NCBI GenBank assembly: GCA_002269645.1
Contig: NIVC01002986.1
Location: 1-64,000 of the forward strand
Reading direction: 5' to 3'
DNA from: Macrostomum lignano
Lineage: Eukaryota
DNA: 64,000 nucleotides
Position numbers and translations under genes: made by a program. Below, in pieces: positions 7,902 to 63,758 of the stretch (positions are counted from its first letter, which is position 1; each line of letters opens with the position of its first letter). The notes beneath the pieces were generated by a model. It was not told the DNA's origin. It did no database searches and saw nothing but the letters and a program-made list of their open reading frames with translations.

Positions 7902-7955
7902 TGCGAACAGACTGGAACTGCTAATGTAGCAACCTGGGTTCAAATCTTAGTAGTG
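7902..7955 (+). mobile_element. tRNA-derived SINE-like head (copy 2)
   Basis: gcgaacagactggaactgctaatgtagcaacctgggttcaaatcttagtagtg aligns with 4021-4073. Two of the differences are CG to CA changes. Confidence 0.4.
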
Positions 7956-7974
7956 CAAAATGACACCCTTAAAA

Positions 7975-9671: not shown

Positions 9672-9698
9672 GTCGAGCACCGCAGGTGCAGGGGATCC

Positions 9699-10471: not shown

Positions 10472-11033
<562 letters not shown>

Positions 11034-28798: not shown

Positions 28799-29355
<557 letters not shown>

Positions 29356-29489
29356 TAGAAATAGAGAACTCGTGCTCATTATCGCTAAAAGCTGTAGGGC
29401 TTAAAGTTCTAATGGGCGCTACTATGAGTAGAAATGCACGCTCAAATCGCTAATTTCTCATTGGCCCTACTGAACCTGCAGCCACAGCC

Positions 29490-31008: not shown

Positions 31009-31103
31009 TATTTTCAATTCATTCCGACGTCGATTTCAGCTCTAATCGCCCCAGCTTAGCTGGGAAACCAGTCAGCGAGTTTAATCTCCCCATTTCTATC
31101 AGC

Positions 31104-34174: not shown

Positions 34175-34195
34175 ACAGTAGACAGTCTTACCCTA

Positions 34196-36567: not shown

Positions 36568-37199
36568 TCTGGCTAGATTCTGTATTTGGCCCTGCAGTTA
36601 AGAAAATTTTTGCCCACCCCAAGTTTAAAAATAGCCTTGCAGATTTTGGTTAGGATTAGGGTTACGTTTGGCAGTCAACGTTTGGCGTTTGTAGACCCTG
36701 AATCTGGTGCACTTTGCGGTGGGCCTAAGTAACGCCTACTAATTTAAATATTTATACAGTATTACAGTGTTACGTATATTACACAGTGATTCGAGGACAC
36801 CCAAATCGATTTCTGTCTGTACAGTTTATTTTTTTAATTAAACTTCTCTCAGAGTGATCGTCCGTGCATACCTTTTTCTATGCTTATAAATATTAGTTTT
36901 ACTACTATTATTCAGAATCTGAGAAATTTTAGAGAGGAAATTCTCGAAGTTGTCTCGGTAAAATGTTTCTTATTTAATTTTAACAAAGTATTTAATTTTA
37001 GTGCTGCTATATTTATTATTGGCTGTATGTTGTCTAATTATAATAGACTATTATATCGTCTCATAAAATTAAACACGAATATGAATAATGATGATTTAAA
37101 AATTATTTTATTAAACCTTTTTATTCTGTAGCTACTAAGCAGCTGCGCTATAATAATTAAAATTCTTGCTATTCTCTCGTTGTATTGTAATCCTTTTTG

Positions 37200-37929
37200 G
37201 GTGAAGTAGGGTGAGATTGGGAGAGGTAGGGTGAGATTGGAGAGGTAAGGTGACATTCGGAGAGGTAGAGTGAGGTTAGGAGAGGTAGGGTGAGATTGGA
37301 GAGGTAGGGTGAGATTGGGAGAGGTAGGGTGAGATTGGAGAGGTAGGGTGAGATTGGAAGAGGTAGGGTGAGATTGGGAGAGGTAGGGTGAGATTGGGAG
37401 AGGTAGGGTGAGATTACGAGAGGTAGAGTGAGATTGGAGAGGTAGGGTGAGATTGGAGAGGTAGGGTGAGATTGGAGAGGTAGGGTGAGATTGGGAGAGG
37501 TAGGGTAAGATTGGGAGAGGTAGGGTGAGATTAGGAGAGGTAGCGTGAGATTGGGAGAGGTAGAGTGAGATTGGGAGAGGTAGGGTGAGATTGGAGAGGT
37601 AGGGTGAGATTGGAAGAGGTAGGGTGAGATTGGGAGAGGTAGGGTGAGATTGGGAGAGGTAGGGTGAGATTACGAGAGGTAGAGTGAGATTGGAGAGGTA
37701 GGGTGAGATTGGAGAGGTAGGGTGAGATTGGAGAGGTAGGGTGAGATTGGGAGAGGTAGGGTAAGATTGGGAGAGGTAGGGTGAGATTAGGAGAGGTAGC
37801 GTGAGATTGGGAGAGGTAGAGTGAGATTGGGAGAGGTAGGGTGAGATTGGGAGAGGTAGAGTGAGATTGGGAGAGGTAGGGTGAGATTGGGAGACGTAGG
37901 GTGAGATTGGGAGAGGTAGGGTGAGATTA
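37200..37929. repeat. ~19-20 bp G-rich minisatellite (gagaggtagggtgagattgg)
   Basis: Tandem array. Variant units (gattacg, gtaagat) recur at a 256-bp offset. Confidence 0.97.
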
Positions 37930-43224: not shown

Positions 43225-46200
43225 ATAGGGACACCCTCCAAGAGACAGTGACGCGCACCAAGAGACAGGGCACCCTCCAAAAGACACTAAGTGACAGGGG
43301 CACCCTTCAAGAGAGGGGAGTGCTCACCAAGAGATAGGGGTGCCCACCAAGAGACAAGGGAGCCCTCCAACAGATAGGGGTGCCCTCCAAGAGACAGGGG
43401 TGCCCTCCAAGAGACAGGGGCACCCACCAAGAGACAGGGGTGCCCTCCAAGAGACGGGAGCCCTCCAAGAGACAGGGGCACCCACCAAGAGACAGGGGTG
43501 CCCTCCAAGAGACAGGGGTGCCCTCCAAGAGACAGGGGAGCCCTCCAAGAGACAGGGGCACCCACCAAGAGACAGGGGTGCCCTCCAAGAGACAGGGGAG
43601 CCCTCCAAGAGACAGGGGCGCCCACCAAGAGACAGGGGTGCCCTCCAAGAGACAGGGGAGCCCTCCAAGAGACAGGGGCGCACACCAAGAGACAGGGGTG
43701 CCCTCCAAGAGACAGGGGCACCCACCAAGAGACAGGGGTGCCCACCAAGAGACAGGGGTGCCCACCAAGAGACAGGGGTGCCCACCAAGAGACAGCTAGG
43801 GGTGCCCACCAAGAGACAGGGGTGCCCACCAAGAGACAGGGGTGCCCACCAAGAGACAACTATAGGGGTGCCCACCAAGAGACAGGGGTGCCCACCAAGA
43901 GACAACTATAGGGGTGCCCACTAAGAGACAGGGGTGCCCACCAAGAGACAGGGGTGCCCACCAAGAGACAACTATAGGGGTGCCCACCAAGAGAGAGGGG
44001 TGCCCACCAAGAGACAACTATAGGGGTGCCCACCAAGAGACAGGGGTGCCCACCAAGAGACAGGGGTGCCCACCAAGAGACAGGGGCGCCCACCAAGAGA
44101 CAGGGGTGCCCTCCAAGAGACAGGGGCACCCACCAAGAGACAGGGGTGCCCACCAAGAGACAGGGGTGCCCACCAAGAGACAGCTAGGGGTGCCCACCAA
44201 GAGACAGGGGCGCCCACCAAGAGACAGGGGTGCCCTCCAAGAGACAGGGGCACCCACCAAGAGACAGGGGTGCCCACCAAGAGACAGGGGTGCCCACCAA
44301 GAGACAGGGGTGCCCACCAAGAGACAGCTAGGAGTGCCCACCAAGAGACAGGGGTGCCCACCAAGAGACAGGGGTGCCCACCAAGAGACAACTATAGGGG
44401 TGCCCACCAAGAGACAGGGGTGCCCACCAAGAGACAACTATAGGGGTGCCCACTAAGAGACAGGAATGCCCACCAAGAGACAGGGGTGCCCACCAAGAGA
44501 CAACTATAGGGGTGCCCACCAAGAGACAGGGGTGCCCACCAAGAGACAACTATAGGGGTGCCCACTAAGAGACAGGGGTGCCCACCAAGAGACAGGGGTG
44601 CCCACCAAGAGACAGGGGTGCCCACCAAGAGACAGCTAGGGGTGCCCACCAAGAGACAGGGATGCCCACCAAGAGACAGGGGTGCCCACCAAGAGACAAC
44701 TATAGGGGTGCCCACCAAGAGACAGGGGTGCCCACCAAGAGACAACTATAGGGGTGCCCACCAAGAGACAGGGGTGCCCACCAAGAGACAACTATAGGGG
44801 TGCCCACCAAGAGACAGGGGTGCCCACCAAGAGACAGGGGTGCCCACCAAGAGACAGGGGTGCCCACCAAGAGACAGCTAGGGGTGCCCACCAAGAGACA
44901 GCTAGGGGTGCCCACCAAGAGACAGGGGCGCCCACCAAGAGACAGGGGTGCCCTCCAAGAGACAGGGGCACCCACCAAGAGACAGGGGTGCCCACCAAGA
45001 GACAGGGGTGCCCACCAAGAGACAGGGGTGCCCACCAAGAGACAGCTAGGAGTGCCCACCAAGAGACAGGGGTGCCCACCAAGAGACAGGGGTGCCCACC
45101 AAGAGACAACTATAGGGGTGCCCACCAAGAGACAGGGGTGCCCACCAAGAGACAACTATAGGGGTGCCCACTAAGAGACAGGAATGCCCACCAAGAGACA
45201 GGGGTGCCCACCAAGAGACAACTATAGGGGTGCCCACCAAGAGACAGGGGTGCCCACAAGAGACAACTATAGGGGTGCCCACTAAGAGACAGGGGTGCCC
45301 ACCAAGAGACAGGGGTGCCCACCAAGAGACAGGGGTGCCCACCAAGAGACAGCTAGGGGTGCCCACCAAGAGACAGGGATGCCCACCAAGAGACATGGGT
45401 GCCCACCAAGAGACAACTATAGGGGTGCCCACCAAGAGACAGGGGTGCCCACCAAGAGACAACTATAGGGGTGCCCACCAAGAGACAGGGGTGCCCACCA
45501 AGAGACAACTATAGGGGTGCCCACCAAGAGACAGGGGTGCCCACCAAGAGACAGGGGTGCCCACCAAGAGACAGGGGTGCCCACCAAGAGACAGCTAGGG
45601 GTGCCCACCAAGAGACAGCTAGGGGTGCCCACCAAGAGACAGGGGTGCCCACCAAGAGACAGCTAGGGGTGCCCACCAAGAGACAGGGGTGCCCACTAAG
45701 AGACAGTGGCGCCCACCAAGAGACAGGGGTGCCCACCAAGAGACAGCTAGGGGTGCCCACCAAGAGACAGCTAGGGGTGCCCACCAAGAGACAGGGGTGC
45801 CCACCAAGAGACAGCTAGGGGTGCCCACCAAGAGACAGGGGTGCCCACCAAGAGACAGTGGCGCCCACCAAGAGACAGGGGCGCCCACCAAGAGACAGGG
45901 GTGCCCACCAAGAGACAGCTAGGGGTGCCCACCAAGAGACAGGGGTGCCCACCAAGAGACAGGGGTGCCCACCAAGAGACAGCTAGGGGTGCCCACCAAG
46001 AGACAGCTAGGGGTGCCCACCAAGAGACAGGGGTGCCCACCAAGAGACAGTGGCGCCCACCAAGAGACAGGGGCGCCCACCAAGAGACGGGCGCCCACCA
46101 AGAGACAGTGGCGCCCACCAAGAGACAGGGGCGCCCACCAAGAGACAGGGGTGCCCACCAAGAGACAGGGGTGCCCACCAAGAGACAGCTAGGGGTGCCC

Positions 46201-49200
46201 ACCAAGAGACAGGGGTGCCCACCAAGAGACAGGGGTGCCCACCAAGAGACAACTATAGGGGTGCCCACCAAGAGACAGGGGTGCCCTCCAAGAGACGGGA
46301 GCCCTCCAAGAGACAGGGGCACCCACCAAGAGACAGGGGTGCCCTCCAAGAGACAGGGGTGCCCTCCAAGAGACAGGGGAGCCCTCCAAGAGACAGGGGC
46401 ACCCACCAAGAGACAGGGGTGCCCTTCAAGAGACAGGGGAGCCCTCCAAGAGACAGGGGCGCCCACCAAGAGACAGGGGTGCCCTCCAAGAGACAGGGGA
46501 GCCCTCCAAGAGACAGGGGCGCCCACCAAGAGACAGGGGTGCCCTCCAAGAGACAGGGGCACCCACCAAGAGACAGGGGTGCCCACCAAGAGACAGGGGT
46601 GCCCACCAAGAGACAGGGGTGCCCACCAAGAGACAGCTAGGGGTGCCCACCAAGAGACAGGGGTGCCCACCAAGAGACAGGGGTGCCCACCAAGAGACAA
46701 CTATAGGGGTGCCCACCAAGAGACAGGGGTGCCCACCAAGAGACAACTATAGGGGTGCCCACTAAGAGACAGGGGTGCCCACCAAGAGACAGGGGTGCCC
46801 ACCAAGAGACAACTATAGGGGTGCCCACCAAGAGACAGGGGTGCCCACCAAGAGACAACTATAGGGGTGCCCACCAAGAGACAGGGGTGCCCACCAAGAG
46901 ACAGGGGTGCCCACCAAGAGACAGGGGCGCCCACCAAGAGACAGGGGTGCCCTCCAAGAGACAGGGGCACCCACCAAGAGACAGGGGTGCCCACCAAGAG
47001 ACAGGGGTGCCCACCAAGAGACAGGGGTGCCCACCAAGAGACAGCTAGGGGTGCCCACCAAGAGACAGGGGCGCCCACCAAGAGACAGTGGCGCCCACCA
47101 AGAGACAGGGGCGCCCACCAAGAGACGGGCGCCCACCAAGAGACAGTGGCGCCCACCAAGAGACAGGGGCGCCCACCAAGAGACAGGGGTGCCCACCAAG
47201 AGACAGGGGTGCCCACCAAGAGACAGCTAGGGGTGCCCACCAAGAGACAGGGGTGCCCACCAAGAGACAGGGGTGCCCACCAAGAGACAACTATAGGGGT
47301 GCCCACCAAGAGACAGGGGTGCCCTCCAAGAGACGGGAGCCCTCCAAGAGACAGGGGCACCCACCAAGAGACAGGGGTGCCCTCCAAGAGACAGGGGTGC
47401 CCTCCAAGAGACAGGGGAGCCCTCCAAGAGACAGGGGCACCCACCAAGAGACAGGGGTGCCCTTCAAGAGACAGGGGAGCCCTCCAAGAGACAGGGGCGC
47501 CCACCAAGAGACAGGGGTGCCCTCCAAGAGACAGGGGAGCCCTCCAAGAGACAGGGGCGCCCACCAAGAGACAGGGGTGCCCTCCAAGAGACAGGGGCAC
47601 CCACCAAGAGACAGGGGTGCCCACCAAGAGACAGGGGTGCCCACCAAGAGACAGGGGTGCCCACCAAGAGACAGCTAGGGGTGCCCACCAAGAGACAGGG
47701 GTGCCCACCAAGAGACAGGGGTGCCCACCAAGAGACAACTATAGGGGTGCCCACCAAGAGACAGGGGTGCCCACCAAGAGACAACTATAGGGGTGCCCAC
47801 TAAGAGACAGGGGTGCCCACCAAGAGACAGGGGTGCCCACCAAGAGACAACTATAGGGGTGCCCACCAAGAGACAGGGGTGCCCACCAAGAGACAACTAT
47901 AGGGGTGCCCACCAAGAGACAGGGGTGCCCACCAAGAGACAGGGGTGCCCACCAAGAGACAGGGGCGCCCACCAAGAGACAGGGGTGCCCTCCAAGAGAC
48001 AGGGGCACCCACCAAGAGACAGGGGTGCCCACCAAGAGACAGGGGTGCCCACCAAGAGACAGGGGTGCCCACCAAGAGACAGCTAGGGGTGCCCACCAAG
48101 AGACAGGGGCGCCCACCAAGAGACAGGGGTGCCCTCCAAGAGACAGGGGCACCCACCAAGAGACAGGGGTGCCCACCAAGAGACAGGGGTGCCCACCAAG
48201 AGACAGGGGTGCCCACCAAGAGACAGCTAGGGGTGCCCACCAAGAGACAGGGGTGCCCACCAAGAGACAGGGGTGCCCACCAAGAGACAGGGGTGCCCAC
48301 CAAGAGACAACTATAGGGGTGCCCACCAAGAGACAGGGGTGCCCACCAAGAGACAGGGGTGCCCACCAAGAGACAACTATAGGGGTGCCCACCAAGAGAC
48401 AGGGGTGCCCACCAAGAGACAACTATAGGGGTGCCCACTAAGAGACAGGGGTGCCCACCAAGAGACAGGGGTGCCCACCAAGAGACAACTATAGGGGTGC
48501 CCACCAAGAGACAGGGGTGCCCACCAAGAGACAACTATAGGGGTGCCCACCAAGAGACAGGGGTGCCCACCAAGAGACAACTATAGGGGTGCCCACTAAG
48601 AGACAGGGGTGCCCACCAAGAGACAGGGGTGCCCACCAAGAGACAACTATAGGGGTGCCCACCAAGAGACAGGGGTGCCCACCAAGAGACAGGGGAGCCC
48701 TCCAAGAGACAGGGGCGCCCACCAAGAGACAGGGGTGCCCTCCAAGAGACAGGGGCACCCACCAAGAGACAGGGGTGCCCACCAAGAGACAGGGGTGCCC
48801 ACCAAGAGACAGGGGTGCCCACCAAGAGACAGCTAGGGGTGCCCACCAAGAGACAGGGGTGCCCACCAAGAGACAGGGGTGCCCACCAAGAGACAACTAT
48901 AGGGGTGCCCACCAAGAGACAGGGGTGCCCACCAAGAGACAACTATAGGGGTGCCCACTAAGAGACAGGGGTGCCCACCAAGAGACAGGGGTGCCCACCA
49001 AGAGACAACTATAGGGGTGCCCACCAAGAGACAGGGGTGCCCACCAAGAGACAACTATAGGGGTGCCCACCAAGAGACAGGGGTGCCCACCAAGAGACAG
49101 GGGTGCCCACCAAGAGACAGGGGTGCCCACCAAGAGACAGCTAGGGGTGCCCACCAAGAGACAGCTAGGGGTGCCCACCAAGAGACAGGGGTGCCCACCA

Positions 49201-50552
49201 AGAGACAGCTAGGGGTGCCCACCAAGAGACAGGGGTGCCCACCAAGAGACAGTGGCGCCCACCAAGAGACAGGGGCGCCCACCAAGAGACAGGGGTGCCC
49301 ACCAAGAGACAGCTAGGGGTGCCCACCAAGAGACAGCTAGGGGTGCCCACCAAGAGACAGGGGTGCCCACCAAGAGACAGCTAGGGGTGCCCACCAAGAG
49401 ACAGGGGTGCCCACCAAGAGACAGTGGCGCCCACCAAGAGACAGGGGCGCCCACCAAGAGACAGGGGTGCCCACCAAGAGACAGCTAGGGGTGCCCACCA
49501 AGAGACAGGGGTGCCCACCAAGAGACAGGGGTGCCCACCAAGAGACAGCTAGGGGTGCCCACCAAGAGACAGCTAGGGGTGCCCACCAAGAGACAGGGGT
49601 GCCCACCAAGAGACAGTGGCGCCCACCAAGAGACAGGGGCGCCCACCAAGAGACGGGCGCCCACCAAGAGACAGTGGCGCCCACCAAGAGACAGGGGCGC
49701 CCACCAAGAGACAGGGGTGCCCACCAAGAGACAGTGGCACCCACCAAAAGACAGTGGCACCCACAAAGAGACAGGGGTGCCCACCAAGAGACAGTGGCGC
49801 CCACCAAGAGACAGGGGCGCCCACCAAGAGACAGGGGTGCCCACCAAGAGACAGTGGCACCCACCAAAAGACAGTGGCACCCACCAAGAGACAGTGGCAC
49901 CCACCAAAAGACAGTGGCACCCACAAAGAGACAGTGGCGCCCACCAAGAGACAGGGGCGCCCACCAAGAGACAGGGGTGCCCACCAAGAGACAGCTAGGG
50001 GTGCCCACCAAGAGACAGTGGCGCCCACCAAGAGACAGGGGCGCCCACCAAGAGATAGGGGTGCCCACCAAGAGACAGTGGCGCCCACCAAGAGACAGGG
50101 GCGCCCACCAAGAGACAGGGGTGCCCACCAAGAGACAGGGGAGCCCACCAAGAGACAGGGGTGCCCTCCAAGAGACAGGGGTGCCCTCCAAGAGATAGGG
50201 GTGCCCTCCAAGAGATAGGGGTGCCCTCCAAGAGACAGGGGAGCCCTCCAAGAGACAGGGGTGCCCACCAAGAGACAGCTAGGGGTGCCCACCAAGAGAC
50301 AGGGGTGCCCACCAAGAGACAGCTAGGGGTGCCCACCAAGAGACAGGGGTGCCCACCAAGAGACAGCTAGGGGTGCCCACCAAGAGACAGGGGTGCCCAC
50401 CAAGAGACAGCTAGGGGTGCCCACCAAGAGACCGGGGTGCCCACCAAGAGACAGCTAGGGGTGCCCACCAAGAGACAGGGGTGCCCACCAAGAGACAGCT
50501 AGGGGTGCCCACCAAGAGACCGGGGTGCCCACCAAGAGACAGTGGCGCTTAC
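43225..50552. repeat. 7.3-kb satellite of 20-bp units (caccaagagacaggggtgcc) with 24- and 26-bp variants and higher-order duplications
   Basis: Variant units carry a GCTA (24 bp) or ACTATA (26 bp) insertion after gagaca. Identical ORF-track entries recur at a 1038-bp offset (46050/47088, 46253/47291) and a 718-bp offset (44328/45046). Confidence 0.99.
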
Positions 50553-52364: not shown

Positions 52365-55300
52365 TCAAGCCGGCCCGTCGTGCCGGTGCTCGGATTTCAA
52401 TCGGACAAATTCGGCCGCCACTTCGTCGTTGGGTCGCTGCGACAGAATCCTGAGCACCGTCCAGCCGATCTCGTTGATGTGCAGCTTCCGGCCCAGGCCG
52501 CACCAGCAGGAGCAGCTGCCCTGCTCGATAATGTCGCGAATCTGCAGCACCGTGACGCCGATCAGGTGGTCCTCGCGGGCGAAGCAATAGTCTTTGCAGC
52601 TCAGCTGCAGCTCGTAGGCTTCTGGCTCCTCCGCTGAACCAATCAGGCTGGGCGGATGTGCGATGGTGAAAAATACAGTGTATAGTGATAATAGTAGCGA
52701 CAGGCACAAGTCAGAAGAGTGACACACCTGAGACAGTCGGGAATGACACAAGTCAGGATAATGACACACCTGAGACAGTCAGGACTGTCACAAGTCAGAA
52801 GAATGACACACCTGAGACAGTCGGGACTGTCACAAGTCAGAAGAATGACACACCTGAGACAGTCGGGACTGTCACAAGTCAGAAGAATGACACACCTGAG
52901 ACAGTCAGGACTGTCACAAGTCAGAAGAATGACACACTTGAGACAGTCAGGACTGTCACAAGTCAGAAGAATGACACACCTGGGACAGTCGGGACTGTCA
53001 CAAGTCAGAAGAATGACACACTTGAGACAGACAGGACTGTCAAAAGTCAGAAGAGTGACACATCTGAGACAGTCGAGACTGTCACAAGTCAGAAGAATGA
53101 CACACCTGAGACAGTCAGGACTGTCACAAGTCAGAAGAATGACACACTTGAGACAGTCAGGACTGTCACAAGTCAGAAGAATGACACACCTGGGACAGTC
53201 GGGACTGTCACAAGTCAGAAGAATGACACACTTGAGACAGACAGGACTGTCAAAAGTCAGAAGAGTGACACATCTGAGACAGTCGAGACTGTCACAAGTC
53301 AGAAGAATGACACACCTGAGACAGTCAGGACTGTCACAAGTCAGAAGAATGACACACCTGGGACAGTCGGGACTGTCACAAGTCAGAAGAATGACACACT
53401 TGAGACAGACAGAACAGTCACTACACGAAATGACTGGCATTTCAAACTCACAAGCTAAACGATTCGTTGTACTTTGGCGACGTTGTGCCGCTCTTGGATT
53501 TAGTTGCAAACTTTCGCTTCTTGCCAGTCAATTTCGGCCCGATCAGATTGACTTCAACGAACGGACGAAACATTGATACGTTTTTCCATTTCAGTTTGCT
53601 GGCCAGAATAATTTTCACATTCACTTTCACGTCTCCAGTGCCGGGATGGCGGAACAGATCGATTTGAACGGACACTTCGCCAACCTGGTCTTCGGTTGCA
53701 GGTTTGTCTGCAATAATCATATTCGAACATATCTTTGGTTTGTATTGTCGCTTTCCTGGGTACTTAGGTCTTAAACAAATGTGGCTTTGCTGTATCAATA
53801 CTAGTCCCAAGTCTGAGAGAAAGAGTGATTCTTTTAATTACAAAATGCGACTAACCTTGACAGTTTTGCGTAGCAACGAAAGTTTTAATCAACGAGTCGG
53901 TCGACTGCGAATACAACGACAGAGCGTGTCGCAGCGACTGCAACTCGGTGCTCTTCTCCAAATAGGCCATCTTCAGGCCGTTGCCGCCGGCGTGAAAATA
54001 CTGCCGAATGGTTTCCAGGGCGATGAGAATGACGCCGCACTGTCTGGGCGTCATTGTCTTGGCCTCGGTGTCTTTCGACAGGGTGTCCTTTGAAGAAGGT
54101 TTTTATAAAGAGATTTTCCGTGTTTAAGAAGAATCTTCACAATCAAACTAAGTAACCGTTAAAACCATACCTGCAACAGGTGCGAAACATTGGATATATT
54201 CGGCACACTGACATTCGAGGAAATGTTGGAGATGTTGCTTAGCAGGCCGTGGCTCACGCCGGACACTGACGCTTTTGACGAAATTGACAGCGTTGAAAAC
54301 AGCTGTAAATTTAACAGAAAATACTTGAGATGAAAATTGAAATTAATTTAGTACTCAGGAGTTTGAAAACTGAGCAGAATTTTTGTCAGCGCTGGGGTGG
54401 GACGATGTCGCTTATAATCTTTCAAAGAATATTTATGAATACTAAACATTAATGAATCACATTACGCTCGTAAATACCTGTCTCGGATCGCTCACAGGCG
54501 GTAGCACGACTCGTTTCTCAAGATTGCTGATAGTTAATCGCCAGACCTCTCTAAGCAGCCTCTTCAAGATGGCTTTCTCACACTCGGAGGCGAATAGCGA
54601 CAGCTCGGCGTCTAGTAGCTCCATCAACGGTCTCAGCACAGCGTCAGCCTCCTCCGCTTGAGCAGCGGCAGTTGCGGCAGCTGCCGCCGATGTTGTGGCA
54701 CCCGAAGGCTGCGGACCCTGCAAAGAGAATCGAGTGTGCAGTAGACGTCTGTTGAGTTGATGTTTAACAGATTGGAGACAACCAAACTACTTGTACGAGC
54801 GTAGAAGGGCGCAACACACACCCTCAATTACCCTCAACTAATGCTGGCACCAGTTTTACAGCTGAGTGAACTGAAGCAACGCTAAATTCAACAGTTAAAA
54901 GCTAGCAAGCAATCGCTCGCATTTACCTTGACAACTCGATGCAGCAATCTGCCAACCTCGTTAACCACTTCCACAATGGCCGCCTCCTGGGAAGCCACAA
55001 ACCGGGCTGCAAGATTATCCAAAGCTGCATTCAATTCGTCCTGCAGATTCTGCAGATAGTCTTGCGTCTCCTGCTGCATCGCTGTACCGCCCATTGCTTC
55101 GTACAGCTTCTCAAGTTGTACTCTGGCCTGCTGGATGTTGTTCATAAGTACGCACGCCTTCTGCGGCTTGTCAGTAAAACTTCCGTAGTCTTTAGCAACA
55201 ATATCGGCGTACGCGAATAGCACCTTGGCTACTGTGCGGCTAAACCGACTTAGGAACGTGGCTTCAACCTCGGGGTCTGGACATTCCAACTTTTTGACAA

Positions 55301-58300
55301 CATCTAAACACTGGTTGAGATGAGTGAAGATGTCAACTACGGAGGTGCTGAACAGGGCGTGTTCAGAGGACTTCTGGAAATTGTCCTTCCTGTCCCGGGC
55401 ATAGGCGCTATGCAGATACTCCATGGAGACTTCGTCATTTTCACTGAGCCAACGGAGTACAAACTGTTCGAACCAGCGTGGATAGTCCGGCACTGAGCCT
55501 TTGTGCGCCGGCGCATCCGCGACGTACTTGTTGTAAAACCACTTGATCTGTTGGGTGTTGAGAGATCGGCAAAGCAGCCTTAAGCTTCGCAAAACTTTGA
55601 AATGATTCAGCAAACAAAATTTTTATTTAGCTGTGTCAATTTTGAATTCAAGTTTTTCGAGATGTCCTGCTGCGATCTTTACATCTATAATGTTGTCTAA
55701 CAACATAAAACTACTTTTTAACACATGAAGGGGAGAAATTCTTTACAAACTCTTTTCTCGCTACTCATCAGTAAGCGACTTGAATAAACTACTAGATTTA
55801 AATCTGGATTTTGGCCTATATTATGATATGGACAGTTTCTGATGAACAATGCGTATCATTGAGTTTAGCCCAAGGTCAGGTCACTGCATTCAGTGAATCA
55901 GAACATTGTCTGTGCCAACAACCCGATTTTGTACAAAGCTTTCTAAGAAACATACAAATCCCTTTGGTTATTTCCAAGCTGATTGAGCAAACAATACAGT
56001 TTTTAGACTTAAAAGGTCTTCACAACATGGGTGCCTGAAATAAAACTTTGACCACTCACCTTAAACAGCAGATTCATATAGTCGGACATTTTCACGGTTG
56101 GCTTCTCGCTATGCTCCTGCAGTGCCAGTTGAACATCCTGACTAAAGTGGCTCCACATCGATGACGCACTCAACTGTCCAATGTTGACATCCAGCTGCAG
56201 AGATGACAGCACAGGCGTGTAATTGACTCGATCCTCCTCGATCACCGACACCATCAGTTCAACTAGGCGATGCCAAAACTCCAGACCGTCTGGCGACTGG
56301 CGATCGACGTCGTTTGACTGCAGTTCGTTGCAGTTGTCGAACAGGAACTGATAAGTTGTCTTCATGCAGTTAAGGGCGCATTCCTTCAGCACGGTGGCAG
56401 CACGTGGAGCACTGCTGAGATTCTGGACCTGCGGAGAAATGATATCATATTCGCACGATATTCGCACGAGGACTTTGCGGCACCCTGACAAAACGCCCTC
56501 AGTGACATCGGCTCAAAACCAGAGCTGAGGGCAATTCTGCCCATTCCGCTCATACACACGAGGTTTGGGGGGGGGTTGTCCTCAATGGCTGCGAATTGGG
56601 CTGCGCACGGAATCGAACCCGGGGTCATAGGGTGAGAGTCAAATGCATCTACCGCGGAGTTGCTTCTGTATACTGTACAAACTGTTCACAGAAGCGTGCA
56701 CTTATAAGAGAAAAGTACAAACCTTTAATCGAAAAAATGTAATACTAGTCAGCAGGTCCACAGTGCACTTCATGTCGTGCAGTCGTTCCGGCTGCGACGC
56801 CGGAAACGAATTCCTGTACACGGCCAGACTGATGCGCAGCGAATTGTGCAGCTGGTCCAGCAGCTTCACGAACTTCTCTTTGCCGAAGTTGGACGCCGCA
56901 AATCGATCGCCGGCGCTCACCGCGTTCGACGTGGCGTTGTGCGCGTAGTAAGAATTGATGTGCGCAAGAAGGTTGGACATCACCTCCGGTACGCCTCGAC
57001 ACATGGACTTTGTGGTTAGGCAGGAAAAGTGTCTGGAATGCGTTGGAAATATATTGCGTTTGATCAGTGGTGTACATAGGGGATTTATTTTCCGGGGGGA
57101 TGCAACAGTGTGCCAATTGGTGCTCGTCCCCTGTCTCTCGGTGGCCGCCCCTGTCTCTTGGTAGGCGCCTCTGTCTCTCGGTGGGCGCCCCTGTCTCTTG
57201 GTGAGCGCCCCTGTCTCTTGGTAGGCGCCCCTGTCTCTTGGTGAGCGCCCCTGTCTCTTGGTAGGCGCCCCTGTCTCTTGGTAGGCGCCCCTGTCTCTTG
57301 GTAGGCGCCCCTGTCTCTTGGTAGGCGCCCTGTCTCTTGGTGGGCGCCCTGTCTCTTGGTGGGCGCCCTGTCTCTTGGTGGGCGCCCCTGTCTCTTAGTG
57401 GGCGCCCCTGTCTCTTGGTAGGCGCCCTGTCTCTTGGTAGGCGCCACTGTCTCTTGGTAGGCGCCCCTGTCTCTTGGTAGGCGCTACTGTCTCTTGGTAG
57501 GCGCCCTGTCTCTTGGTAGGCGCCCTGTCTCTTGGTGGGCGCCCCTGTCTCTTGGTGAGCGCCCCTGTCTCTTGGTGGGCGCCCCTGTCTCTTGGTAGGC
57601 GTCTCTGTCTCTTGGTGGGCGCCCCTGTCTCTTGGTGAGCGCCCCTGTCTCTTGGTAGGCGCCCCTGTCTCTTGGTAGGCGCCCTGTCTCTTGGTGGGCG
57701 CCCTGTCTCTTGGTGGGCGCCCCTGTCTCTTAGTGGGCGCCCCTGTCTCTTGGTAGGCGCCCCTGTCTCTTGGTAGGCGCTACTGTCTCTTGGTAGGCGC
57801 CCTGTCTCTTGGTAGGCGCCCTGTCTCTTGGTGGGCGCCCCTGTCTCTTGGTGAGCGCCCCTGTCTCTTGGTAGGCGCCCCTGTCTCTTGGTAGGCGCCC
57901 TGTCTCTTGGTGGGCGCCCCTGTCTCTTGGTAGGCGCCCTGTCTCTTGGTGGGCGCCCCTGTCTCTTGGTGGGCGTCCCTGTCTCTAGGTGAGCGCCCCT
58001 GTCTCTTGGTGGGCGCCCCTGTCTCTTGGTAGGCGCCCCTGTCTCTTGGTAGGCGCCCCTGTCTCTTAGTAGGCGCCCCTGTCTCTTGGTAGGCGCCACT
58101 GTCTCTTGGTAGGCGCCCTGTCTCTTGGTAGGCGCCACTGTCTCTTGGTAGGCGCCCCTGTCTCTTGGTAGGCGCCACTGTCTCTTGGTAGGCGCCCCTG
58201 TCTCTTGGTAGGCGCCACTGTCTCTTGGTAGGCGCCCCTGTCTCTTAGTAGGCGCCCCTGTCTCTTGGTAGGCGCCCCCACCATCTTGGTGCCTGCCGCC

Positions 58301-61300
58301 TCTCTGGCTGCGGGTTTCGACTATGAACTCAATGAGACTGGTTACCCGTAAGCCGACATAGCCTGAGAAATCTCGTACCCAATAGCATTCGACCGATTTA
58401 TTCCCCGGGAGGCAGACTGCTGTGCAGGCAGCAGGAGTTGAGCTGTGTTGATTTATGCGTGCGCCAGATTTGCAGAACAAATTTTGCATACAATTCAGCA
58501 AACAGAAGCTGCTAGAAATGTTACTGGTAAATTCTTCTTGTCTAGAAGAAGAGCGACTAGTGTAGAACCCCCCCCCCCTAAGCCGATGCTTAACTGTCAG
58601 TTGGATCGGGGGGAACAGACATTTCTGAGCAACAGAGCCCAGCAGCAGTTCGTTTGAGTTGGCGCCGTGACGGACTTTTGCCTTTGCCAATCCAATAGAG
58701 AATTGCTGGGATGCAGCTTCCAGCCTAAAAGAGAGAAATGCTATCTCGAAGGCAAGGCAAGGAGAAGAGAGAGAACGGCGAGAAGGCTGTTGGAGAAAGA
58801 TTTGCTGAATGATGAATAGCATTTCACTGCCCTCTTCGAGCCAGCATTAACGGCTTTGGGAAGTCAGAAGTTGGGAAATTTTCAGATGATGCGAAGAAAG
58901 AGGTAAGATCCTGCTGAGTCTAAAATAGTAGCCTCGTCTCGTTCTCAAACTGCCTCTTTTCAAAGCAGATTGCTGTAAAACTCTAAGCATGAAAAAGACT
59001 AGGGCGAAGACGTAGGGTACTCTATTATAAAAAGGTCTTGACGCACCTGTTAGGCTGCTTCCTGGGAATCCCAATCGGGGCTTGTAATTTGTCTCAACTC
59101 GCGGGAATAGCAAATTTAGGCGGCTGAGATTCAAGGGAAATGTTCTCAGGGAATTCCATCCTCTTATGGAAGCTCTTTCCGAACTTCAGAAACTTATTAT
59201 TAAATATTTTTGACTCGATGGAAAAGGAGGGACACGAATGGTATACATGGTTGGAACGAAATGAAAGACCACGACACCTGGTTCGATCCGCGGTCATTTA
59301 GGCTCTTGCCGAAAATTGATCCCCAAGGCGCATAGAGTGTACATGCCTTACGATTAGAAAGTCAATGGTCTGCTGTACATCCTGTTTACATTTTCAGGGG
59401 GCGTTCCATAATCTGATATCACATCGCTAAAGGCAGGCTCTTACGCGACCCAGTGGTTAAAACTTTATATCGTCAAAAAGTCTTACTGAAAATTTGAGCT
59501 TTTGAAAGTGCTATCTGTAGTCAGGAAGCTTTAGACTAACTTTAAAACTATTCTGCTATCTATGGTTTTGTTTGCTGAGAAACATATGAAGCCTTATTAC
59601 TCAAATATCCGTACTTACTTTACAGTGTATTAAGCCTATAGTCTTAGTTACTCTTAGTTCTATAGTAAGTACTATAGTAACAGGGGTTGTAGCCTAGTGG
59701 TTAGAGTAGTTAGAAAGTCGGACTCACGACTGAAAGGTGGGGGGGGTTCGATTTTAGACCTACTCTGTACAATTTGTGTCCTTGACCTAGGCACTTAACT
59801 CTGCGTTGCTTCAGTTCACCCAGCTGTAAAATGGGTGCCAGCATTAACCTCCCAGTCCTTGGACTGAACAGCCGTACGCAGCCTTCAGATGCGCCGCGCA
59901 ATAGCTGCGGCTGAGCTGTCGGTTGCACATCTGCCCATTAGGGCAGGTGTAACCAATTATGATTATTAATATTATCTGTAGTCTTAGTTTTATATACTTA
60001 CGTCATCGCCCTGTAGATGTTTTCAATGCCGTATCGCATCGCGAACTCGTCCGTGATCTCTTGCATAGTGGGCAAAAAGTAGATTTTCCATGCGTTTTCG
60101 CCCTTCACCTTCGGTAGTTGGACTTCGTCTTCGCAGCCTGACTTTTTCGACGACTCGCACATATAGTGAAATATGTTCTGCACGTTCAGAAAATAGGAAA
60201 GCCGTGAATTAAATTCAGCTTGTAGAGTGAGCAGTACGACGCGTTATGCACTGTCAACTTTTAAGATATTCCAACTCACCTCATGCAGGCAAGTGTACTG
60301 AACGTGATACGGGGCCACCTTTTCTTCACCCTTGATCTCTACGCTGATGTGGAGTCGAATCGCGCCTGAGACCATGGACTTGTCCGTTCGCTTTTCTGTA
60401 ATTAATTTTTTCCAAGTTTCTTTACAATCCATTTTATGTGAAAGCATATTGCTAGAAGTTCAGTTACGGTAAAGATTCGATACGTACCAGTAAACAATTT
60501 TAGTACCACAAAACTTAACTAAAAAAGAGGATTTTACCGTTTTCGAGCTGGTATTTTACACAACAACGCGTTTACAACAAAACATGCATTTAGCTGTGAG
60601 GTTTATTATTCACTTAAAGGTACAACGGTATACAAATAGTTAACATTCGATGTGATAATTGGATATTTCATTGGGCAATACCACTTTTTATTACTAAATA
60701 TTTTAGTCTGAAAACTAAATTTTGTGCATTTTGTTTAATTGTCAGCCGTAGTAATGTGGATTTAATATTTTGTTTAAATGTTTTTCCGTTAGTGAAAGCT
60801 TGCATTAGAAAGGTAAATAATGATTATTAATGATAGTACCGTCGGTGCCAAATGACTGGGGAGGCCGTGGCACCTACCAAGGTTGTACCAGACATCCATT
60901 TGGCCCGATAATTTATTAACATCGATCATTGTCTGGCCCAAAAAGTCGTCAGACTCTGAGGTCAACTTTGATCGAATACGGGATCTCAAGTCATTGTCTT
61001 CGTCCCTGCGACAATAGTAGTGTTAAATGGAAACTCAGCCATTTAGTCGGGTTAAAACAAAACAAACTAAAAGCTAGAGCAATCCGAGAAGTCAACGAGT
61101 TAATATTATACTTTGGGTTGGTACACTTGAACATAAAAAAATTAATCGATTTTTTTATTCACTAAACCAGCTAGAAAACTATTTTTATACTGGATAGTTA
61201 AACTTACTAACTAAACCATGGGGAGTACGAATTACAACACGGTAACACGTCCACGACCTACATTTGACCGGATAGTTGCTATTTGCTATTTCAAGAGTAC

Positions 61301-63758
61301 ATTCATTCAGAAAGCTACTACAGAAGTATCCAAACAGGAACGACGTAATACTAGCAGCAGACGCTGCGGGCACGACTTTTGAACTGCGTCGACGTCTGTT
61401 CAGGAGGACTAAGACCTACCCAAGTTGTACCAAACGTCCATCTCTCCGGACAGCGTACGAACTTCGATCAGCGTCTGACCAAGAAAATCGTCAGATTCTC
61501 GCGTCAAACGCTGACGAATTCTAGATTTGAAGTCATTGTCTTCGTCCCTGAGTTGGCGTACGAGTATATTATTGATAGTTGCAACAGTGTCACTGGGAGG
61601 AGTGTGCGAAGCGCACGCATGTAGCTGATAGAGACAGTCTATAAAACATTTTTGAAAAGACAGCGGTAGAATTCTAACGATTGTGCAGTTTCAATGAACT
61701 CACCAAACTCGAACTTTAATACGGTCTGAAAAGTTGTGACACTCGCTGAAACGGAAGAAAAGTTATCCAAGTTATTGTCAGAATCTAGCTCAGAATCAGT
61801 GGCCAGCTCAACTTACAAGAAAAACTTCTCGTTCCAAGCCGGATTGAGTTCTTGCGGCACTGTCTTGGTTCGCTTCTTGATTCTTCCAACCTGCACTGTG
61901 ACATACGGATCGGAGGTACCAGTCTTGTCCTTACCGATGAGCCCTTGAGCGCAGATGACTGTGATGGCCAGTTTTGCGCTCCAATTGCTGCTGCCCTCCA
62001 GAATTGACTGCTGAACTATTTTCACCTGAAAGGAATAATTAAAATAAATAATTAATTAAAAGATGCTTGACACCATGGCGAAATGTATTCGACGACATCG
62101 GCTCACAACCAGCAATTCTGTGCAGCTCTCTGACTTCTGAGTACATACAAGCACGCCAATACTGTACGCAGGCACGCTCTCTGTGCCCTGGGGGTTGGCC
62201 CTCATAGAGGTGAACGCGCGACAACCCCACCGGCCAATTTTCTTTCACAAGTGGCCGAGCGTCAAGCGAATTTAGGCGCGCATGGAATCGAACTAGAGGA
62301 CGTGGCTTGAATGTGAGACGGCTGCTCCGACCACATTAAAATAGTCTGAATAAATTCACTAAGCTAAAATCATGTTGATTTCAAACCTGCATGAAAATTT
62401 CTTCTATAACCTTTCACGTTAGATAGATGCAAACTGAAGAAGGACGCGGTTTCATAGTAAAAGAAACTGAAAGTCGAATGCTAAGAGCCTTTTGAGCTGA
62501 AATTTTAACCCTTTGGCAAACAAAGCAAACAATACGAGCGTATATGCGTTAATTTTTTCAAGCATTCCTTAAACCGAATTTTCTCTCACCTGTTCCTTAT
62601 GAGCCTGCTCGTCAACGCCAAACACTTGTCGGACTAACACGAACACCTCCGAATGCTGTTGCTCTCTAAGAAGCATTCGTTCTCGCATCGCCTGTTTCAT
62701 TGTGGCCAGCCGGTCCTCGGCTCCTTGTCGCGATGATTTCGCCGCGGCGCGTTGCAAACAGTCGGCGTTGATGAGATCTTTGCACTTCTCGTGAGTCTTG
62801 ATGCCGCACTCTGTGCAGCGCATGCCCTGTCTGGCCAGGCCCCACAGCAGGCCTTCGCATTCGTGACAATAAGTTGGACTAGTTGCCGACCAGACTTGAA
62901 AGCTATGCGGTATAGTGCAGCTAATTGGGTAGCATACGGCTTGGAGTGTCTTCTTGTATACGTGCGATTTCTGAGTACGGAGGTTTAAGCGGTAACTTTT
63001 AATAGCTTATTAAGATGAAACTTAGGAGTTGGTCCCTTCCTCGAGAGGATTAAATGGTGATTAACTCTGATTTTAGGCCCTGTGTCGCTAGAAAGGCGTT
63101 GGATAAATGTAGGCCCTACTAGTATTCTTGAGTATTCTCTATAGACCTGATAAAACATAATTTCAAGCCTAAGGCAACCAGGTATTATTAAAAACATTTA
63201 TGAGGCATATTTAGAAACCAAAATTTTCAATACAGTTTTCGAGGCTGATCCTAGATTTTTTCGATCAGAATTTTAATCTTCAAAACAATCAAACTGAAGA
63301 ACATACGAATTATTCCCGATCAAAGAAAACCAGTCATGCCATTTTAGTCTATTCGTTTCTTCGACTAGTCGTTGAAATCAATGCCGATCATCTCCCACTT
63401 GGTGTCTTGCTCGGCTCTGATTTCCATCTAGCCTCTGGATATGGATATAATATTAAGGCTTCAGCTAGATTCGTCTTCATTCCAATACATATCCCCAATG
63501 CTGTAAAGACATATTTCGTAGCCCTGGGCTAAGATCAGACACTTGATAGATAGATACATGTATGATATATGAATCGGCTAGCAGATTATGAGCTGAGAAA
63601 TTGGCAATTGGGCCCGATAGATTAACAGCATTAACGATTTTTATTCGGCTGTAACTTATAACAGCAGCTCAGCTCACCAGTTCTTCGTCGTTCAAACTCT
63701 GCCTAGCAACCAGCGACGCGGATGCGCCCGCTTGATTGCGCTTCTGCGCGACCATCGT
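52365..63758 (-). CDS. unc-13: Unc-13/Munc13 (C1, C2B, MUN, C2C), 5'-partial, ~1191 aa in window
   Basis: Exons in minus-strand order, all GT-AG and phase-consistent: 63678-63758, 62590-62970 (C1 domain), 61817-62025, 61704-61745, [61420-61547 or 60878-61005], 60280-60395, 60002-60177, 56723-57032, 56060-56428, 54927-55547, 54478-54717, 54171-54302, 53856-54087, 53452-53707, 52365-52647 (TGA). The total is 3576 nt with one alternative exon. The translation tracks Munc13 from SLNDEEL/[11 protein letters not shown] to EFVRLKSE. Confidence 0.97.
52703..53415. repeat. 42-bp minisatellite filling the last unc-13 intron
   Basis: Unit gacacacctgagacagtcaggactgtcacaagtcagaagaat, about 17 copies. A variant block repeats at a 210-bp offset. 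Confidence 0.98.
56495..56663 (-). mobile_element. tRNA-derived SINE in an unc-13 intron
   Basis: The minus strand reads ...gactctcaccctatgaccccgggttcgattcc (tRNA-like arm plus B-box). It shares gacatcggctca(a/c)aacca and gcgca(c/t)ggaatcgaac with 62085-62335. Confidence 0.55.
57128..58277. repeat. 19-20 bp satellite (cccctgtctcttggtaggcg), inverted relative of the 43225-50552 family, in an unc-13 intron
   Basis: The reverse-complement unit cgcc(c/t)accaagagacagggg matches the ggcgcc variant of the large array. Confidence 0.97.
59683..59975 (+). mobile_element. tRNA-head SINE with conserved central-domain-like body and AT-rich tail
   Basis: A-box TAGCCTAGTGG and B-box GGTTCGATT, then gtgtccttgacctaggcacttaactc...cacccagctgtaaaatgggtgcc (a motif typical of V/CORE/Deu-type SINE bodies), and an attatgattattaatatta tail. 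Confidence 0.7.
60878..61005 (-). CDS. unc-13: unc-13 C2B alternative exon B (128 bp, phases 2/1)
   Basis: CAG|G GAC GAA...TAC AAC CTT G|GTAGGT; encodes (W)[42 protein letters not shown](E). Confidence 0.9.
61420..61547 (-). CDS. unc-13: unc-13 C2B alternative exon A (128 bp, phases 2/1)
   Basis: CAG|G GAC GAA...TAC AAC TTG G|GTAGGT; encodes (W)[42 protein letters not shown](E). Confidence 0.93.
62085..62335 (-). mobile_element. Second copy of the 56495 SINE family
   Basis: Shares the blocks listed for 56495-56663. A reverse B-box (ggaatcgaac) lies at ~62285-62294. Confidence 0.45.

What the first reader, a model, noticed from the sequence alone, without database searches (positions are those of the whole stretch)
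60878..61547. Tandem mutually exclusive exons swap Ca2+-binding loop 3 of the Unc-13 C2B domain
Seen: two paralogous exons, each exactly 128 bp, have identical phases (2 in, 1 out), intact CAG acceptors and GTAGGT donors, and open frames. They lie between the 42-bp [14 protein letters not shown] exon and the KRTDKS exon. Because 128 is not a multiple of 3, including both or skipping both frameshifts the mRNA, so only one-of-two gives protein. The acidic Ca2+-ligand motifs (DEDND, ESDD) are conserved in both. The differences fall in the basic loop-3 helix ([11 protein letters not shown] vs [11 protein letters not shown]) and the following strand ([10 protein letters not shown] vs [10 protein letters not shown]), and many silent changes suggest purifying selection on both. 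Established: the Munc13 C2B domain binds Ca2+ and phosphoinositides through this loop, regulating vesicle priming and short-term plasticity, and loop 3 is implicated in autoinhibition in C. elegans UNC-13. Inference: this is a splicing switch that tunes lipid/Ca2+ sensitivity of release in different neurons. I do not know of such a C2B exon pair in model species. The 414-bp spacer is too long for simple steric exclusion, so NMD, RNA pairing or a splicing factor would have to enforce the choice.
Basis: partly seen in the sequence, partly recalled or inferred. Interest (0 to 1): 0.88.

Follow-up and report, generated by a model that had tools for sequence, protein, structure and literature searches.

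The report
Alternative exon pair in Unc-13 C2B
The flatworm Macrostomum lignano's gene for the synaptic priming protein Unc-13 carries two interchangeable copies of the exon that encodes the calcium- and lipid-binding loop of its C2B domain; the pair is real, old and under selection, and equivalent pairs are already annotated as alternative isoforms in bivalves and a brachiopod, though I found no paper describing any of them.

Summary
On the minus strand, two 128-nt exons (A 61547-61420, B 61005-60878) have AG acceptors, GTAGGT donors and the same phase. They lie between the 42-nt ECHN exon and the KRTDKS exon of unc-13.

- **Species:** the window is Macrostomum lignano. The A-only splice chain reproduces UniProt A0A1I8HVR6 exactly once its inserted exon-B segment is removed.
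- **Reading frame:** A-only and B-only chains each give an open 1150-aa protein, differing at 10 residues. Including both, or neither, gives an early stop.
- **Conservation in flatworms:** the pair is also present in two further M. lignano paralogues and in Echinostoma, Schistosoma and Paragonimus. Cestodes keep only the B type in this gene. Between the two trematodes, each copy has pN 0.02-0.03 against saturated pS.
- **Beyond flatworms:** the annelid Owenia has a tandem pair. RefSeq isoform pairs in three bivalves and Lingula differ only in this exon.
- **Protein differences:** they lie in the loop-3 helix (K763R, Q768S and loss of the R772 equivalent, rat Munc13-1 numbering).

No transcript data for M. 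lignano could be examined, and no RNA-pairing signal was found.

The parts
52365..62970 (-). C1-C2B-MUN-C2C part of the unc-13 gene. It has 14 exons and all introns are GT-AG.
   Evidence: The spliced reconstruction equals UniProt A0A1I8HVR6 (M. lignano) minus its inserted exon-B segment. The homologue carries Pfam C1_1, C2 and MUN hits. It matches rat Munc13-1 structures 7T7C and 5UE8 at E about 5e-79 to 7e-79.
61817..62025 (-). Constitutive exon encoding the first half of C2B, including Ca2+-binding loop 1 (equivalents of D705, K706 and D711).
   Evidence: alignment to 5UE8.
61704..61745 (-). Constitutive 42-nt exon ([14 protein letters not shown]). It ends with TG of the Trp codon, so the next exon is entered in phase 2.
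61548..61703 (-). Intron of 156 nt upstream of exon A.
   Evidence: it contains no UGCAUG.
61420..61547 (-). Exon A (128 nt): [42 protein letters not shown]. This is the ancestral-type loop 3 plus the following strands.
   Evidence: It is close to the consensus of other animals (5 of 42 differences from the protostome consensus). It is used in the A-only chain that equals the database protein.
61006..61419 (-). Intron of 414 nt between A and B. It is too long for steric exclusion and shows no homology to the other introns.
60878..61005 (-). Exon B (128 nt): [42 protein letters not shown]. This is the derived-type loop 3.
   Evidence: The B signature (K to R, Q to S, and R to S/T/A before ESDD) is shared with two M. 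lignano paralogues, trematodes and cestodes.
60396..60877 (-). Intron of 482 nt downstream of B. It holds the only UGCAUG of the three introns, at 60588-60583.
   Evidence: 1 observed against 0.08 expected, P about 0.08; a hint only.
60280..60395 (-). Constitutive exon (E)[38 protein letters not shown], accepted from either A or B.

Best explanation
Exons A and B are a pair of mutually exclusive alternative exons of the M. lignano unc-13 gene. Each mRNA that makes protein carries exactly one of them.

**What the swap does.** It exchanges 42 residues of the C2B domain, equivalent to D757-L798 of rat Munc13-1. These cover the Ca2+-binding loop 3 with its basic membrane-inserting helix, plus the two strands that follow. 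The Ca2+-ligand motifs (DEDND, ESDD) and the critical R769-equivalent basic residue are unchanged. Exon A gives the ancestral-type loop. Exon B gives a derived loop (K763R, Q768S, R772 to S) with one positive charge fewer next to the Ca2+ site. In Macrostomum, B also changes the following strand and loop (E784D, R786N, T787K).

**How exclusivity is enforced, at minimum.** The reading frame does it. 128 is not a multiple of 3, so double inclusion stops at codon 260 and double skipping stops at codon 211. Both stops lie far upstream of ten further exon junctions, so such mRNAs should be removed by nonsense-mediated decay.

**What chooses A or B.** Most likely a trans-acting splicing regulator, not RNA pairing or steric hindrance.

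**History.** The pair is ancient. It predates the split of Macrostomorpha and Neodermata. It may go back to the lophotrochozoan ancestor.

**Shown:** anatomy, frame logic, conservation, selection, and annotated exclusivity in other phyla. **Inferred:** usage in M. lignano, decay of aberrant mRNAs, the regulator, and a difference in membrane/Ca2+ behaviour.
For: **Anatomy and frame**
- Coordinates, lengths and splice sites.
- Full A-only and B-only open reading frames and the early stops.

**Conservation in flatworms**
- Three M. lignano paralogues (about 70-77% identical proteins) each carry A then B. The A exons cluster together and the B exons cluster together.
- Tandem A/B pairs with AG and GT sites occur in Echinostoma caproni and Schistosoma japonicum.
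- Paragonimus gene models use B alone or A+B fused.
- Cestodes have only the B type in this gene. Rodentolepis nana has a second locus with an A type only.

**Selection**
- E. caproni against S. japonicum: exon A pN 0.020, exon B pN 0.031, with pS at or above 0.9.
- M. lignano A against B: pN 0.175, pS 0.75.

**Exclusivity annotated elsewhere**
- RefSeq isoform pairs of equal length differ only inside this segment: Crassostrea angulata X1/X2, Mytilus trossulus X5/X6 and X1/X3, Mizuhopecten yessoensis X9/X10 and X13/X14, and Lingula anatina X1/X3, X7/X8, X10/X11.
- Owenia fusiformis has a tandem 128-nt pair in its genome.

**Functional weight of the region**
- Alignment to 5UE8 gives the residue numbering.
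- R769E severely impairs priming and membrane binding (PMC8648301).
- The loop-3 helix inserts into the bilayer (PMC8851502).
- Loop-3 Ca2+-site mutations disinhibit worm UNC-13 (PMC11991699).
Against: - No transcript evidence for M. lignano could be examined.
- A search with the B-form C2B found no Macrostomum-derived spliced fragment with either exon.
- The only transcriptome-guided M. lignano model seen (PAA82660, a paralogue) uses A, so B could be rare.
- The acceptor polypyrimidine tracts of A and B (0.55, 0.60) are not weaker than those of the constitutive exons (mean 0.62), so nothing in the splice sites marks them as regulated.
- No intron pairing above shuffled controls was found.
- The flatworm-B clade has only 52% bootstrap support on 42 residues.
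- The A/B differences are mostly conservative, so a biochemical difference is not guaranteed.
Confidence: 0.78

Rival explanations
1. One copy, most plausibly B, is an unused relic of an exon duplication (a pseudo-exon). The gene makes only the A form.
For: The A form is the ancestral type. It is the one used in a transcriptome-guided M. lignano model of a paralogue and in the E. caproni model. No B-only Macrostomum protein is in the database.
Against: B keeps an open frame, an AG acceptor and a GT donor in three M. lignano paralogues, two trematodes and four cestodes. Orthologous B exons show pN 0.031 against pS 0.90. B is the only copy in the cestode gene and the copy used in Paragonimus heterotremus and P. 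skrjabini models.
Confidence: 0.04
2. Both exons are constitutive and are joined in frame, as in the UniProt models (A0A1I8HVR6, A0A1I8IN99, A0A1I8IAL3). This would give a C2B domain with a duplicated second half.
For: Several automated models contain A followed by B: for M. lignano, and for Mytilus coruscus and Paragonimus westermani.
Against: The M. lignano model can only be reproduced by extending A by 5 nt and trimming B by 1 nt. That implies an intron starting TC and ending GG. With the canonical sites the frame breaks at codon 260. The fused models in other species use different ad hoc trims. Duplicating loop 3 and two strands of a C2 beta-sandwich is not compatible with the solved fold (inference).
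Confidence: 0.02
3. The pair is not a balanced two-isoform switch. A is the default, and B inclusion (alone or with A) serves mainly as regulated unproductive splicing to lower Unc-13 dosage.
For: A+B transcripts carry an early stop and would be decay targets. Coupling of splicing to decay is a known way to set dosage (established knowledge).
Against: A poison exon needs no conserved protein sequence, yet B is conserved at the amino-acid level with saturated synonymous change. B alone makes the protein in cestodes. Both versions head many RefSeq isoforms in bivalves.
Confidence: 0.08
4. The choice is made by competing intronic RNA pairing (docking site and selector sequences), as in insect Dscam1 or 14-3-3 clusters.
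For: Two 14-nt, 93% complementary pairs link the A-B intron (61166-61190) to the intron after B (60539-60552, 60628-60641). Such a loop could hide exon B.
Against: Inter-intron duplex energies are no better than dinucleotide shuffles (z +0.4 to +1.3). The stems are short and AT-rich, and about as many are expected by chance. No second Macrostomum sequence was available to test covariation.
Confidence: 0.08

Closest known systems
RefSeq-annotated alternative versions of the same unc-13 C2B exon in bivalves (Crassostrea angulata, Mytilus trossulus, Mizuhopecten yessoensis, Mya arenaria) and the brachiopod Lingula anatina
   Same: The same exon is involved (between ...RIKVRVW and EKRTDKS...), with the same 42-residue swap. 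Isoform pairs are of identical length and differ only there. In the one fused model seen, the consensus-like version comes first.
   Different: The second versions carry other substitutions. Bivalve v2 has D4, I6, F14 and IDVTT. Lingula has DEDDDLRAKLKHKINRE. Some bivalves have a third, more divergent version with changed acidic motifs (EGDD, EPDE). Orthology to flatworm B is unresolved. These are database isoforms only; I found no paper on them.
Frame-policed mutually exclusive exon pairs (exon lengths not divisible by 3; double inclusion or skipping leads to nonsense-mediated decay). SNAP-25 exons 5a/5b are a presynaptic example (own knowledge).
   Same: These are tandem homologous exons of equal length and phase, where one-of-two preserves the frame and the swap exchanges a functional segment of a release-machinery protein.
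   Different: Decay of aberrant forms and tissue-specific use are documented for the known cases and untested here. Here the swapped segment is a C2-domain Ca2+/lipid-binding loop.
Docking-site/selector RNA-pairing clusters (insect Dscam1 exon 6, 14-3-3 xi, MRP1; own knowledge)
   Same: Tandem arrays of homologous alternative exons in invertebrate neuronal genes.
   Different: No significant intron complementarity here, and only two exons.
Engineered Munc13 C2B loop mutants (R769E, K706E, K720E; D-to-N Ca2+-site mutants; the Munc13-2 K630W mutant)
   Same: They alter charge and Ca2+/PIP2 behaviour of the same membrane-facing loops and change priming or release probability (PMC8648301, PMC5344669, PMC11991699).
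   Different: Exon B is a natural, selected variant. It keeps the R769-equivalent basic residue and the acidic ligands, and changes neighbouring positions (763, 768, 772) that have not been tested, as far as I found.
Partition of alternative exons into separate gene copies (the known inverse relation of alternative splicing and gene duplication; own knowledge)
   Same: In Rodentolepis nana one unc-13 locus has only a B-type exon and a second locus only an A-type exon. This argues that both forms are needed.
   Different: Whether the cestode paralogues arose from a gene that carried both exons was not tested.

Membership tests
Mutually exclusive exon (MXE) pair | Adjacent exons that are homologous to each other | tested here: met
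   91/128 nt and 34/44 aa identical. The repeat spacing is 542 nt and the similarity is confined to the exons.
Mutually exclusive exon (MXE) pair | Same length and phase, with each exon having its own functional splice sites | tested here: met
   Both are 128 nt, with CAG acceptors and GTAGGT donors. The same holds in E. caproni, S. japonicum (coding frame only checked by tblastn) and Owenia.
Mutually exclusive exon (MXE) pair | Either exon alone gives a complete open reading frame | tested here: met
   A-only and B-only chains both give 1150 aa ending at the same stop.
Mutually exclusive exon (MXE) pair | Mature mRNAs contain exactly one of the two | not testable with these tools
   No RNA data for M. 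lignano. Indirect support: RefSeq isoform pairs in bivalves and Lingula differ only in this exon.
Mutually exclusive exon (MXE) pair | Both copies maintained by purifying selection | tested here: met
   pN 0.020 (A) and 0.031 (B) against pS of 0.9 or more between two trematodes. B is conserved in three M. lignano paralogues.
Frame/NMD-enforced exclusivity | Double inclusion and double skipping both shift the frame and create an early stop upstream of later exon junctions | tested here: met
   Stops at codon 260 (A+B) and codon 211 (skip), out of 1150.
Frame/NMD-enforced exclusivity | Aberrant mRNAs are degraded by nonsense-mediated decay | not testable with these tools
   Needs UPF1 knock-down or translation block plus RNA-seq.
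Steric-hindrance exclusivity | The intron between the two exons is too short (about 60 nt or less) for both to be spliced | tested here: not met
   The intron is 414 nt.
U2/U12 spliceosome-incompatibility exclusivity | One exon is flanked by U12-type sites and the other by U2-type sites | tested here: not met
   All four sites are ordinary GT-AG with GTAGGT donors and no TATCCTT-type donor.
Docking-site/selector RNA-pairing exclusivity | Conserved complementary intronic elements that pair competitively | tested here: inconclusive
   No excess duplex stability over shuffles, and only short AT-rich inverted repeats. Conservation could not be tested for lack of sister-species introns.
Unc-13/Munc13 (C1-C2B-MUN-C2C) | Domain order C1, C2, MUN, C2 and close similarity to Munc13-1 | tested here: met
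   Exons found along the whole rat Munc13-1 C-terminal region. The identical M. lignano protein carries PF00130, PF00168 and PF06292. The C2B matches the Munc13-1 chains of 7T7C and 5UE8 at E 4.8e-79 and 7.4e-79.
Unc-13/Munc13 (C1-C2B-MUN-C2C) | C2B acidic Ca2+-ligand motifs present in both variants | tested here: met
   DEDND and ESDD are identical in A and B. The loop-1 aspartates lie in the constitutive upstream exon.

The most novel reading that the evidence does not exclude
The A/B pair descends from a single exon duplication in the lophotrochozoan ancestor. It has been kept for more than 500 million years as a splicing switch in the membrane-inserting loop-3 helix of Unc-13 C2B. It was retained in flatworms, annelids, brachiopods and bivalves. 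It was lost in gastropods and cephalopods. It was resolved into separate genes in tapeworms. The two forms would set different resting membrane affinity or autoinhibition of the priming factor in different neurons. This natural handle on short-term plasticity has not been described in the literature.
Probability: 0.3. Interest if true: 0.7.

Novelty: new member of a known kind. Interest (0 to 1): 0.6.

Why it matters
**Why the region matters.** Munc13/Unc-13 is the central vesicle-priming factor. Its C2B loop 3 is where Ca2+, PIP2 and autoinhibition meet. Single engineered changes there, such as R769E, strongly alter priming.

**What the exon pair offers.** A naturally selected, deeply conserved pair that swaps just this loop points to residues evolution uses for tuning. 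These are positions 763, 768 and 772, and in Macrostomum also 784, 786 and 787. None of them has been tested, as far as I found. The pair also gives a ready A-versus-B comparison for liposome and rescue assays.

**Practical consequences.**
- Current flatworm and some mollusc gene models of unc-13 are wrong here. They fuse both exons or arbitrarily pick one.
- Schistosomes and other trematodes carry the same pair.

Tried and rejected
- **RNA pairing as selector.** Inter-intron duplex energies are no better than dinucleotide shuffles. Inverted repeats are short and AT-rich.
- **Steric and U12 mechanisms.** Excluded by the 414-nt intron and the ordinary GT-AG sites.
- **Weak-acceptor signature.** The pyrimidine content of the A and B acceptors (0.55, 0.60) lies within the range of the 12 other acceptors (mean 0.62, sd 0.11).
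- **Degenerate exon A in cestodes.** Three-frame translation of the 579-773-nt intron in four species shows no remnant.
- **Third exon copy in the window.** None found.
- **Spliced B-form fragments from Macrostomum or trematode transcriptomes.** A search of the protein collection found none. Only genomic cestode models were B-like. The tool appears to return only proteins up to about 1.75 times the query length, which shaped the later searches.
- **Loci for Mytilus edulis and Lineus longissimus.** They could not be fetched, so the bivalve genomic arrangement was not inspected directly.
- **Literature.** Six searches combined unc-13 or Munc13 with mutually exclusive exons, C2B splicing, flatworms or oyster. 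They found no description of this event.
- **Splicing-factor motifs.** UGCAUG is enriched in the introns after A and B summed over four species (10 against 3.7 expected, P about 0.004). This is driven by E. caproni and Owenia. In the window there is a single site (P about 0.08). It is kept as a lead, not a finding.
Full report
**1. The observation**

Reading the minus strand of 60200-62000 and checking by script confirms every stated coordinate.

- The 42-nt exon [14 protein letters not shown] is 61745-61704.
- Exon A is 61547-61420.
- Exon B is 61005-60878.
- The KRTDKS exon starts at 60395.

A and B are each 128 nt. Both are preceded by CAG and followed by GTAGGT. They share 91/128 nt and 34/44 residues, with 15 synonymous and 10 non-synonymous codon differences.

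A repeat search recovers the two copies 542 nt apart. The similarity ends about 6 nt outside the exons. No third copy exists in the window.

**2. The gene and the organism**

A guide-based tblastn locates C1, C2B, MUN and C2C exons from about 62900 to 52380. A long query finds a Macrostomum lignano protein (UniProt A0A1I8HVR6) as the best hit.

A strict spliced reconstruction gives 14 exons, all with GT-AG introns. Its translation is identical to that protein once a 44-residue insertion is removed. That insertion is exon B.

The database model can be reproduced only by extending A by 5 nt and trimming B by 1 nt. This implies an intron that begins TC and ends GG. The published model is therefore an annotation artefact of a kind that tandem alternative exons often cause.

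With the canonical sites:
- the A-only and B-only chains each give 1150 aa and differ at 10 positions;
- A+B stops at codon 260;
- skipping both stops at codon 211.

**3. Is exon B alive?**

*Within M. lignano.* Two further M. lignano unc-13 paralogues, about 70-77% identical at protein level, also carry A followed by B. Their A segments resemble each other (LKSRIRQ[RK]LTRE...IEVRTLSGE). Their B segments also resemble each other (LR[SA]RIRSKLT[ST]E...V[NS]KLSG[QE]). The duplication therefore predates these gene copies.

*In other flatworms.*

| Species | Exon arrangement |
|---|---|
| Echinostoma caproni | 42-nt exon 5980-6021; A-type 7850-7975; B-type 9548-9673; next exon at 10986, all in locus L005; A- and B-type exons with AG and GT sites |
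| Schistosoma japonicum | A-type 3789-3914 and B-type 5064-5189 in L010 |
| Paragonimus heterotremus, P. skrjabini | gene models use B alone |
| P. westermani | gene model fuses both |
| Four cestodes | only a B-type exon in this gene, no remnant of A in the preceding intron |
| Rodentolepis nana | a second unc-13 locus with only an A-type exon |

*Selection.* Nei-Gojobori counts between the two trematodes give pN 0.020 for A and 0.031 for B, with pS of 0.9 or more. M. lignano A against B gives pN 0.175 and pS 0.75. Both copies have therefore been protein-coding under strong constraint for a very long time.

**4. Beyond flatworms**

The annelid Owenia fusiformis has two 128-nt copies between the same flanking exons, at 18250-18377 and 19215-19342 in L008.

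A search with a trematode B-form query, followed by cluster look-ups, showed RefSeq isoform pairs of identical length that differ only inside this 42-residue segment:
- Crassostrea angulata X1/X2;
- Mytilus trossulus X5/X6 and X1/X3;
- Mizuhopecten yessoensis X9/X10 and X13/X14;
- Lingula anatina X1/X3, X7/X8 and X10/X11.

Mya arenaria X14 and Mactra carry a third, more divergent version.

Single copies were found in the Lottia and Priapulus loci. All gastropod, cephalopod and hemichordate isoforms seen also have a single version.

An NJ tree of the 42-residue segments groups all flatworm B exons together (52% bootstrap) next to Owenia B. Bivalve versions 2 and 3 form their own groups. Some states are shared by the second exons:
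- D at position 4 in Owenia, Lingula and bivalves;
- R at position 7 in Lingula and flatworms;
- A at position 8 in Lingula, Owenia and the trematodes;
- S at position 12 in Owenia and flatworms.

These suggest one old duplication, but 42 residues cannot settle it.

**5. What the swap changes**

Alignment to rat Munc13-1 (5UE8 chain index plus 528) reproduces the published D705, K706, D711 and K720. It places the exon at D757-L798.

The acidic motifs are identical in A and B. The R769 equivalent stays basic (R in A, K in B). R769E severely impairs priming and Ca2+-independent membrane binding (PMC8648301).

All flatworm B exons differ from A at K763R, at Q768S, and at the R772 equivalent, which becomes S, T or A. 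That is one positive charge fewer at the end of the loop-3 helix. This helix is reported to insert into the bilayer (PMC8851502). Ca2+-site mutations in this loop disinhibit worm UNC-13 (PMC11991699).

Macrostomum B exons also change the following strand and bottom loop (E784D in two of three, R786N/S, T787K).

A difference in membrane affinity or autoinhibition is therefore plausible, but it is an inference.

**6. How exclusivity and choice could work**

The frame rule is shown by the sequence. Decay of the aberrant mRNAs is inferred.

- Steric hindrance is excluded by the 414-nt intron.
- U12 incompatibility is excluded by the ordinary GT-AG sites.
- Intron-intron duplex energies do not exceed shuffles (z +0.4 to +1.3).
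- Inverted repeats are short and AT-rich.
- Acceptor pyrimidine content is unremarkable.
- UGCAUG occurs once in the intron after B (60588-60583). It is enriched in the post-A and post-B introns summed over four species (10 against 3.7, P about 0.004), driven by two of them. I treat this as a lead for an Rbfox-type regulator, nothing more.

**7. Novelty**

Six literature searches found no description of alternative splicing in the Munc13/Unc-13 C2B domain.

The kind of feature, a frame-policed mutually exclusive exon pair, is well known. The equivalent event is already present, unremarked, in RefSeq isoforms of bivalves and Lingula.

The flatworm pair is mis-annotated everywhere I looked: fused, or one exon picked arbitrarily. 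I therefore class it as a new member of a known kind.

**8. Limits**

- No RNA data for M. lignano were available, so use of B in this species is inferred from conservation.
- The bivalve and Lingula genomic loci were not inspected.

Noticed in passing
window 43285-50542 and 57128-58278: A 20-nt satellite (CACCAAGAGACAGGGGTGCC, about 344 copies, 7.3 kb, GC about 0.62) lies a few kb beyond the last coding exon reconstructed for unc-13 (which ends at 52365). The same unit in reverse orientation (about 58 copies) fills part of the unc-13 intron between exons 6 and 7. Both give long spurious open reading frames.
   Followed up: partly
window 52705-53421: A 42-nt minisatellite (17 copies) lies inside the intron between the two C2C exons of unc-13.
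   Followed up: no
window 6757-6887: An interstitial telomere-like (TTAGGG)n stretch of about 130 nt.
   Followed up: no
window 10472-11003 and 28798-29359: Long (TATC)n and (GATA)n microsatellites in opposite orientation about 18 kb apart. There are many further minisatellites between 4 kb and 40 kb (for example 4124-5925, 30157-31009, 34191-35305, 37197-37928). The window is very repeat-rich.
   Followed up: no
UniProt A0A1I8HVR6, A0A1I8IN99, A0A1I8IAL3, A0A1I8HQL8, A0A1I8HM34 (M. lignano); KAF8567119 (Paragonimus westermani); Mytilus coruscus model P0246: Automated gene models fuse both alternative exons in frame by ad hoc trimming. For the window's gene this needs a TC...GG intron at 61414-61005. 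These records contain a duplicated half C2B domain that is almost certainly not made.
   Followed up: yes
L001 and L003 (Rodentolepis nana); L002, L004, L006 (other cestodes): Tapeworms have lost exon A from this gene and keep an identical B-type peptide in all four species. R. nana has a second unc-13 locus with only an A-type exon. This looks like alternative exons partitioned into gene copies.
   Followed up: partly
Proteins P0263 (Mactra antiquata) and P0264 (Mya arenaria isoform X14): A third bivalve version of the exon changes the second acidic motif (ESDD to EPDE or EGDD) and many loop residues. It may be a Ca2+-binding-impaired C2B isoform.
   Followed up: no
window 60583-60588; L005 intron between A and B; L008 intron after B: UGCAUG (the Rbfox-type motif) is absent from the intron before A in all four species examined. 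It is over-represented in the introns after A and B in aggregate (10 against 3.7 expected).
   Followed up: partly
Arthropod fragments P0017, P0038, P0040, P0071, P0077, P0097: In insects the genomic models run into intron after ...FLGQTIIE. The exon boundary inside this segment therefore differs from the 128-nt exon shared by flatworms, molluscs, annelids, priapulids and vertebrates.
   Followed up: no
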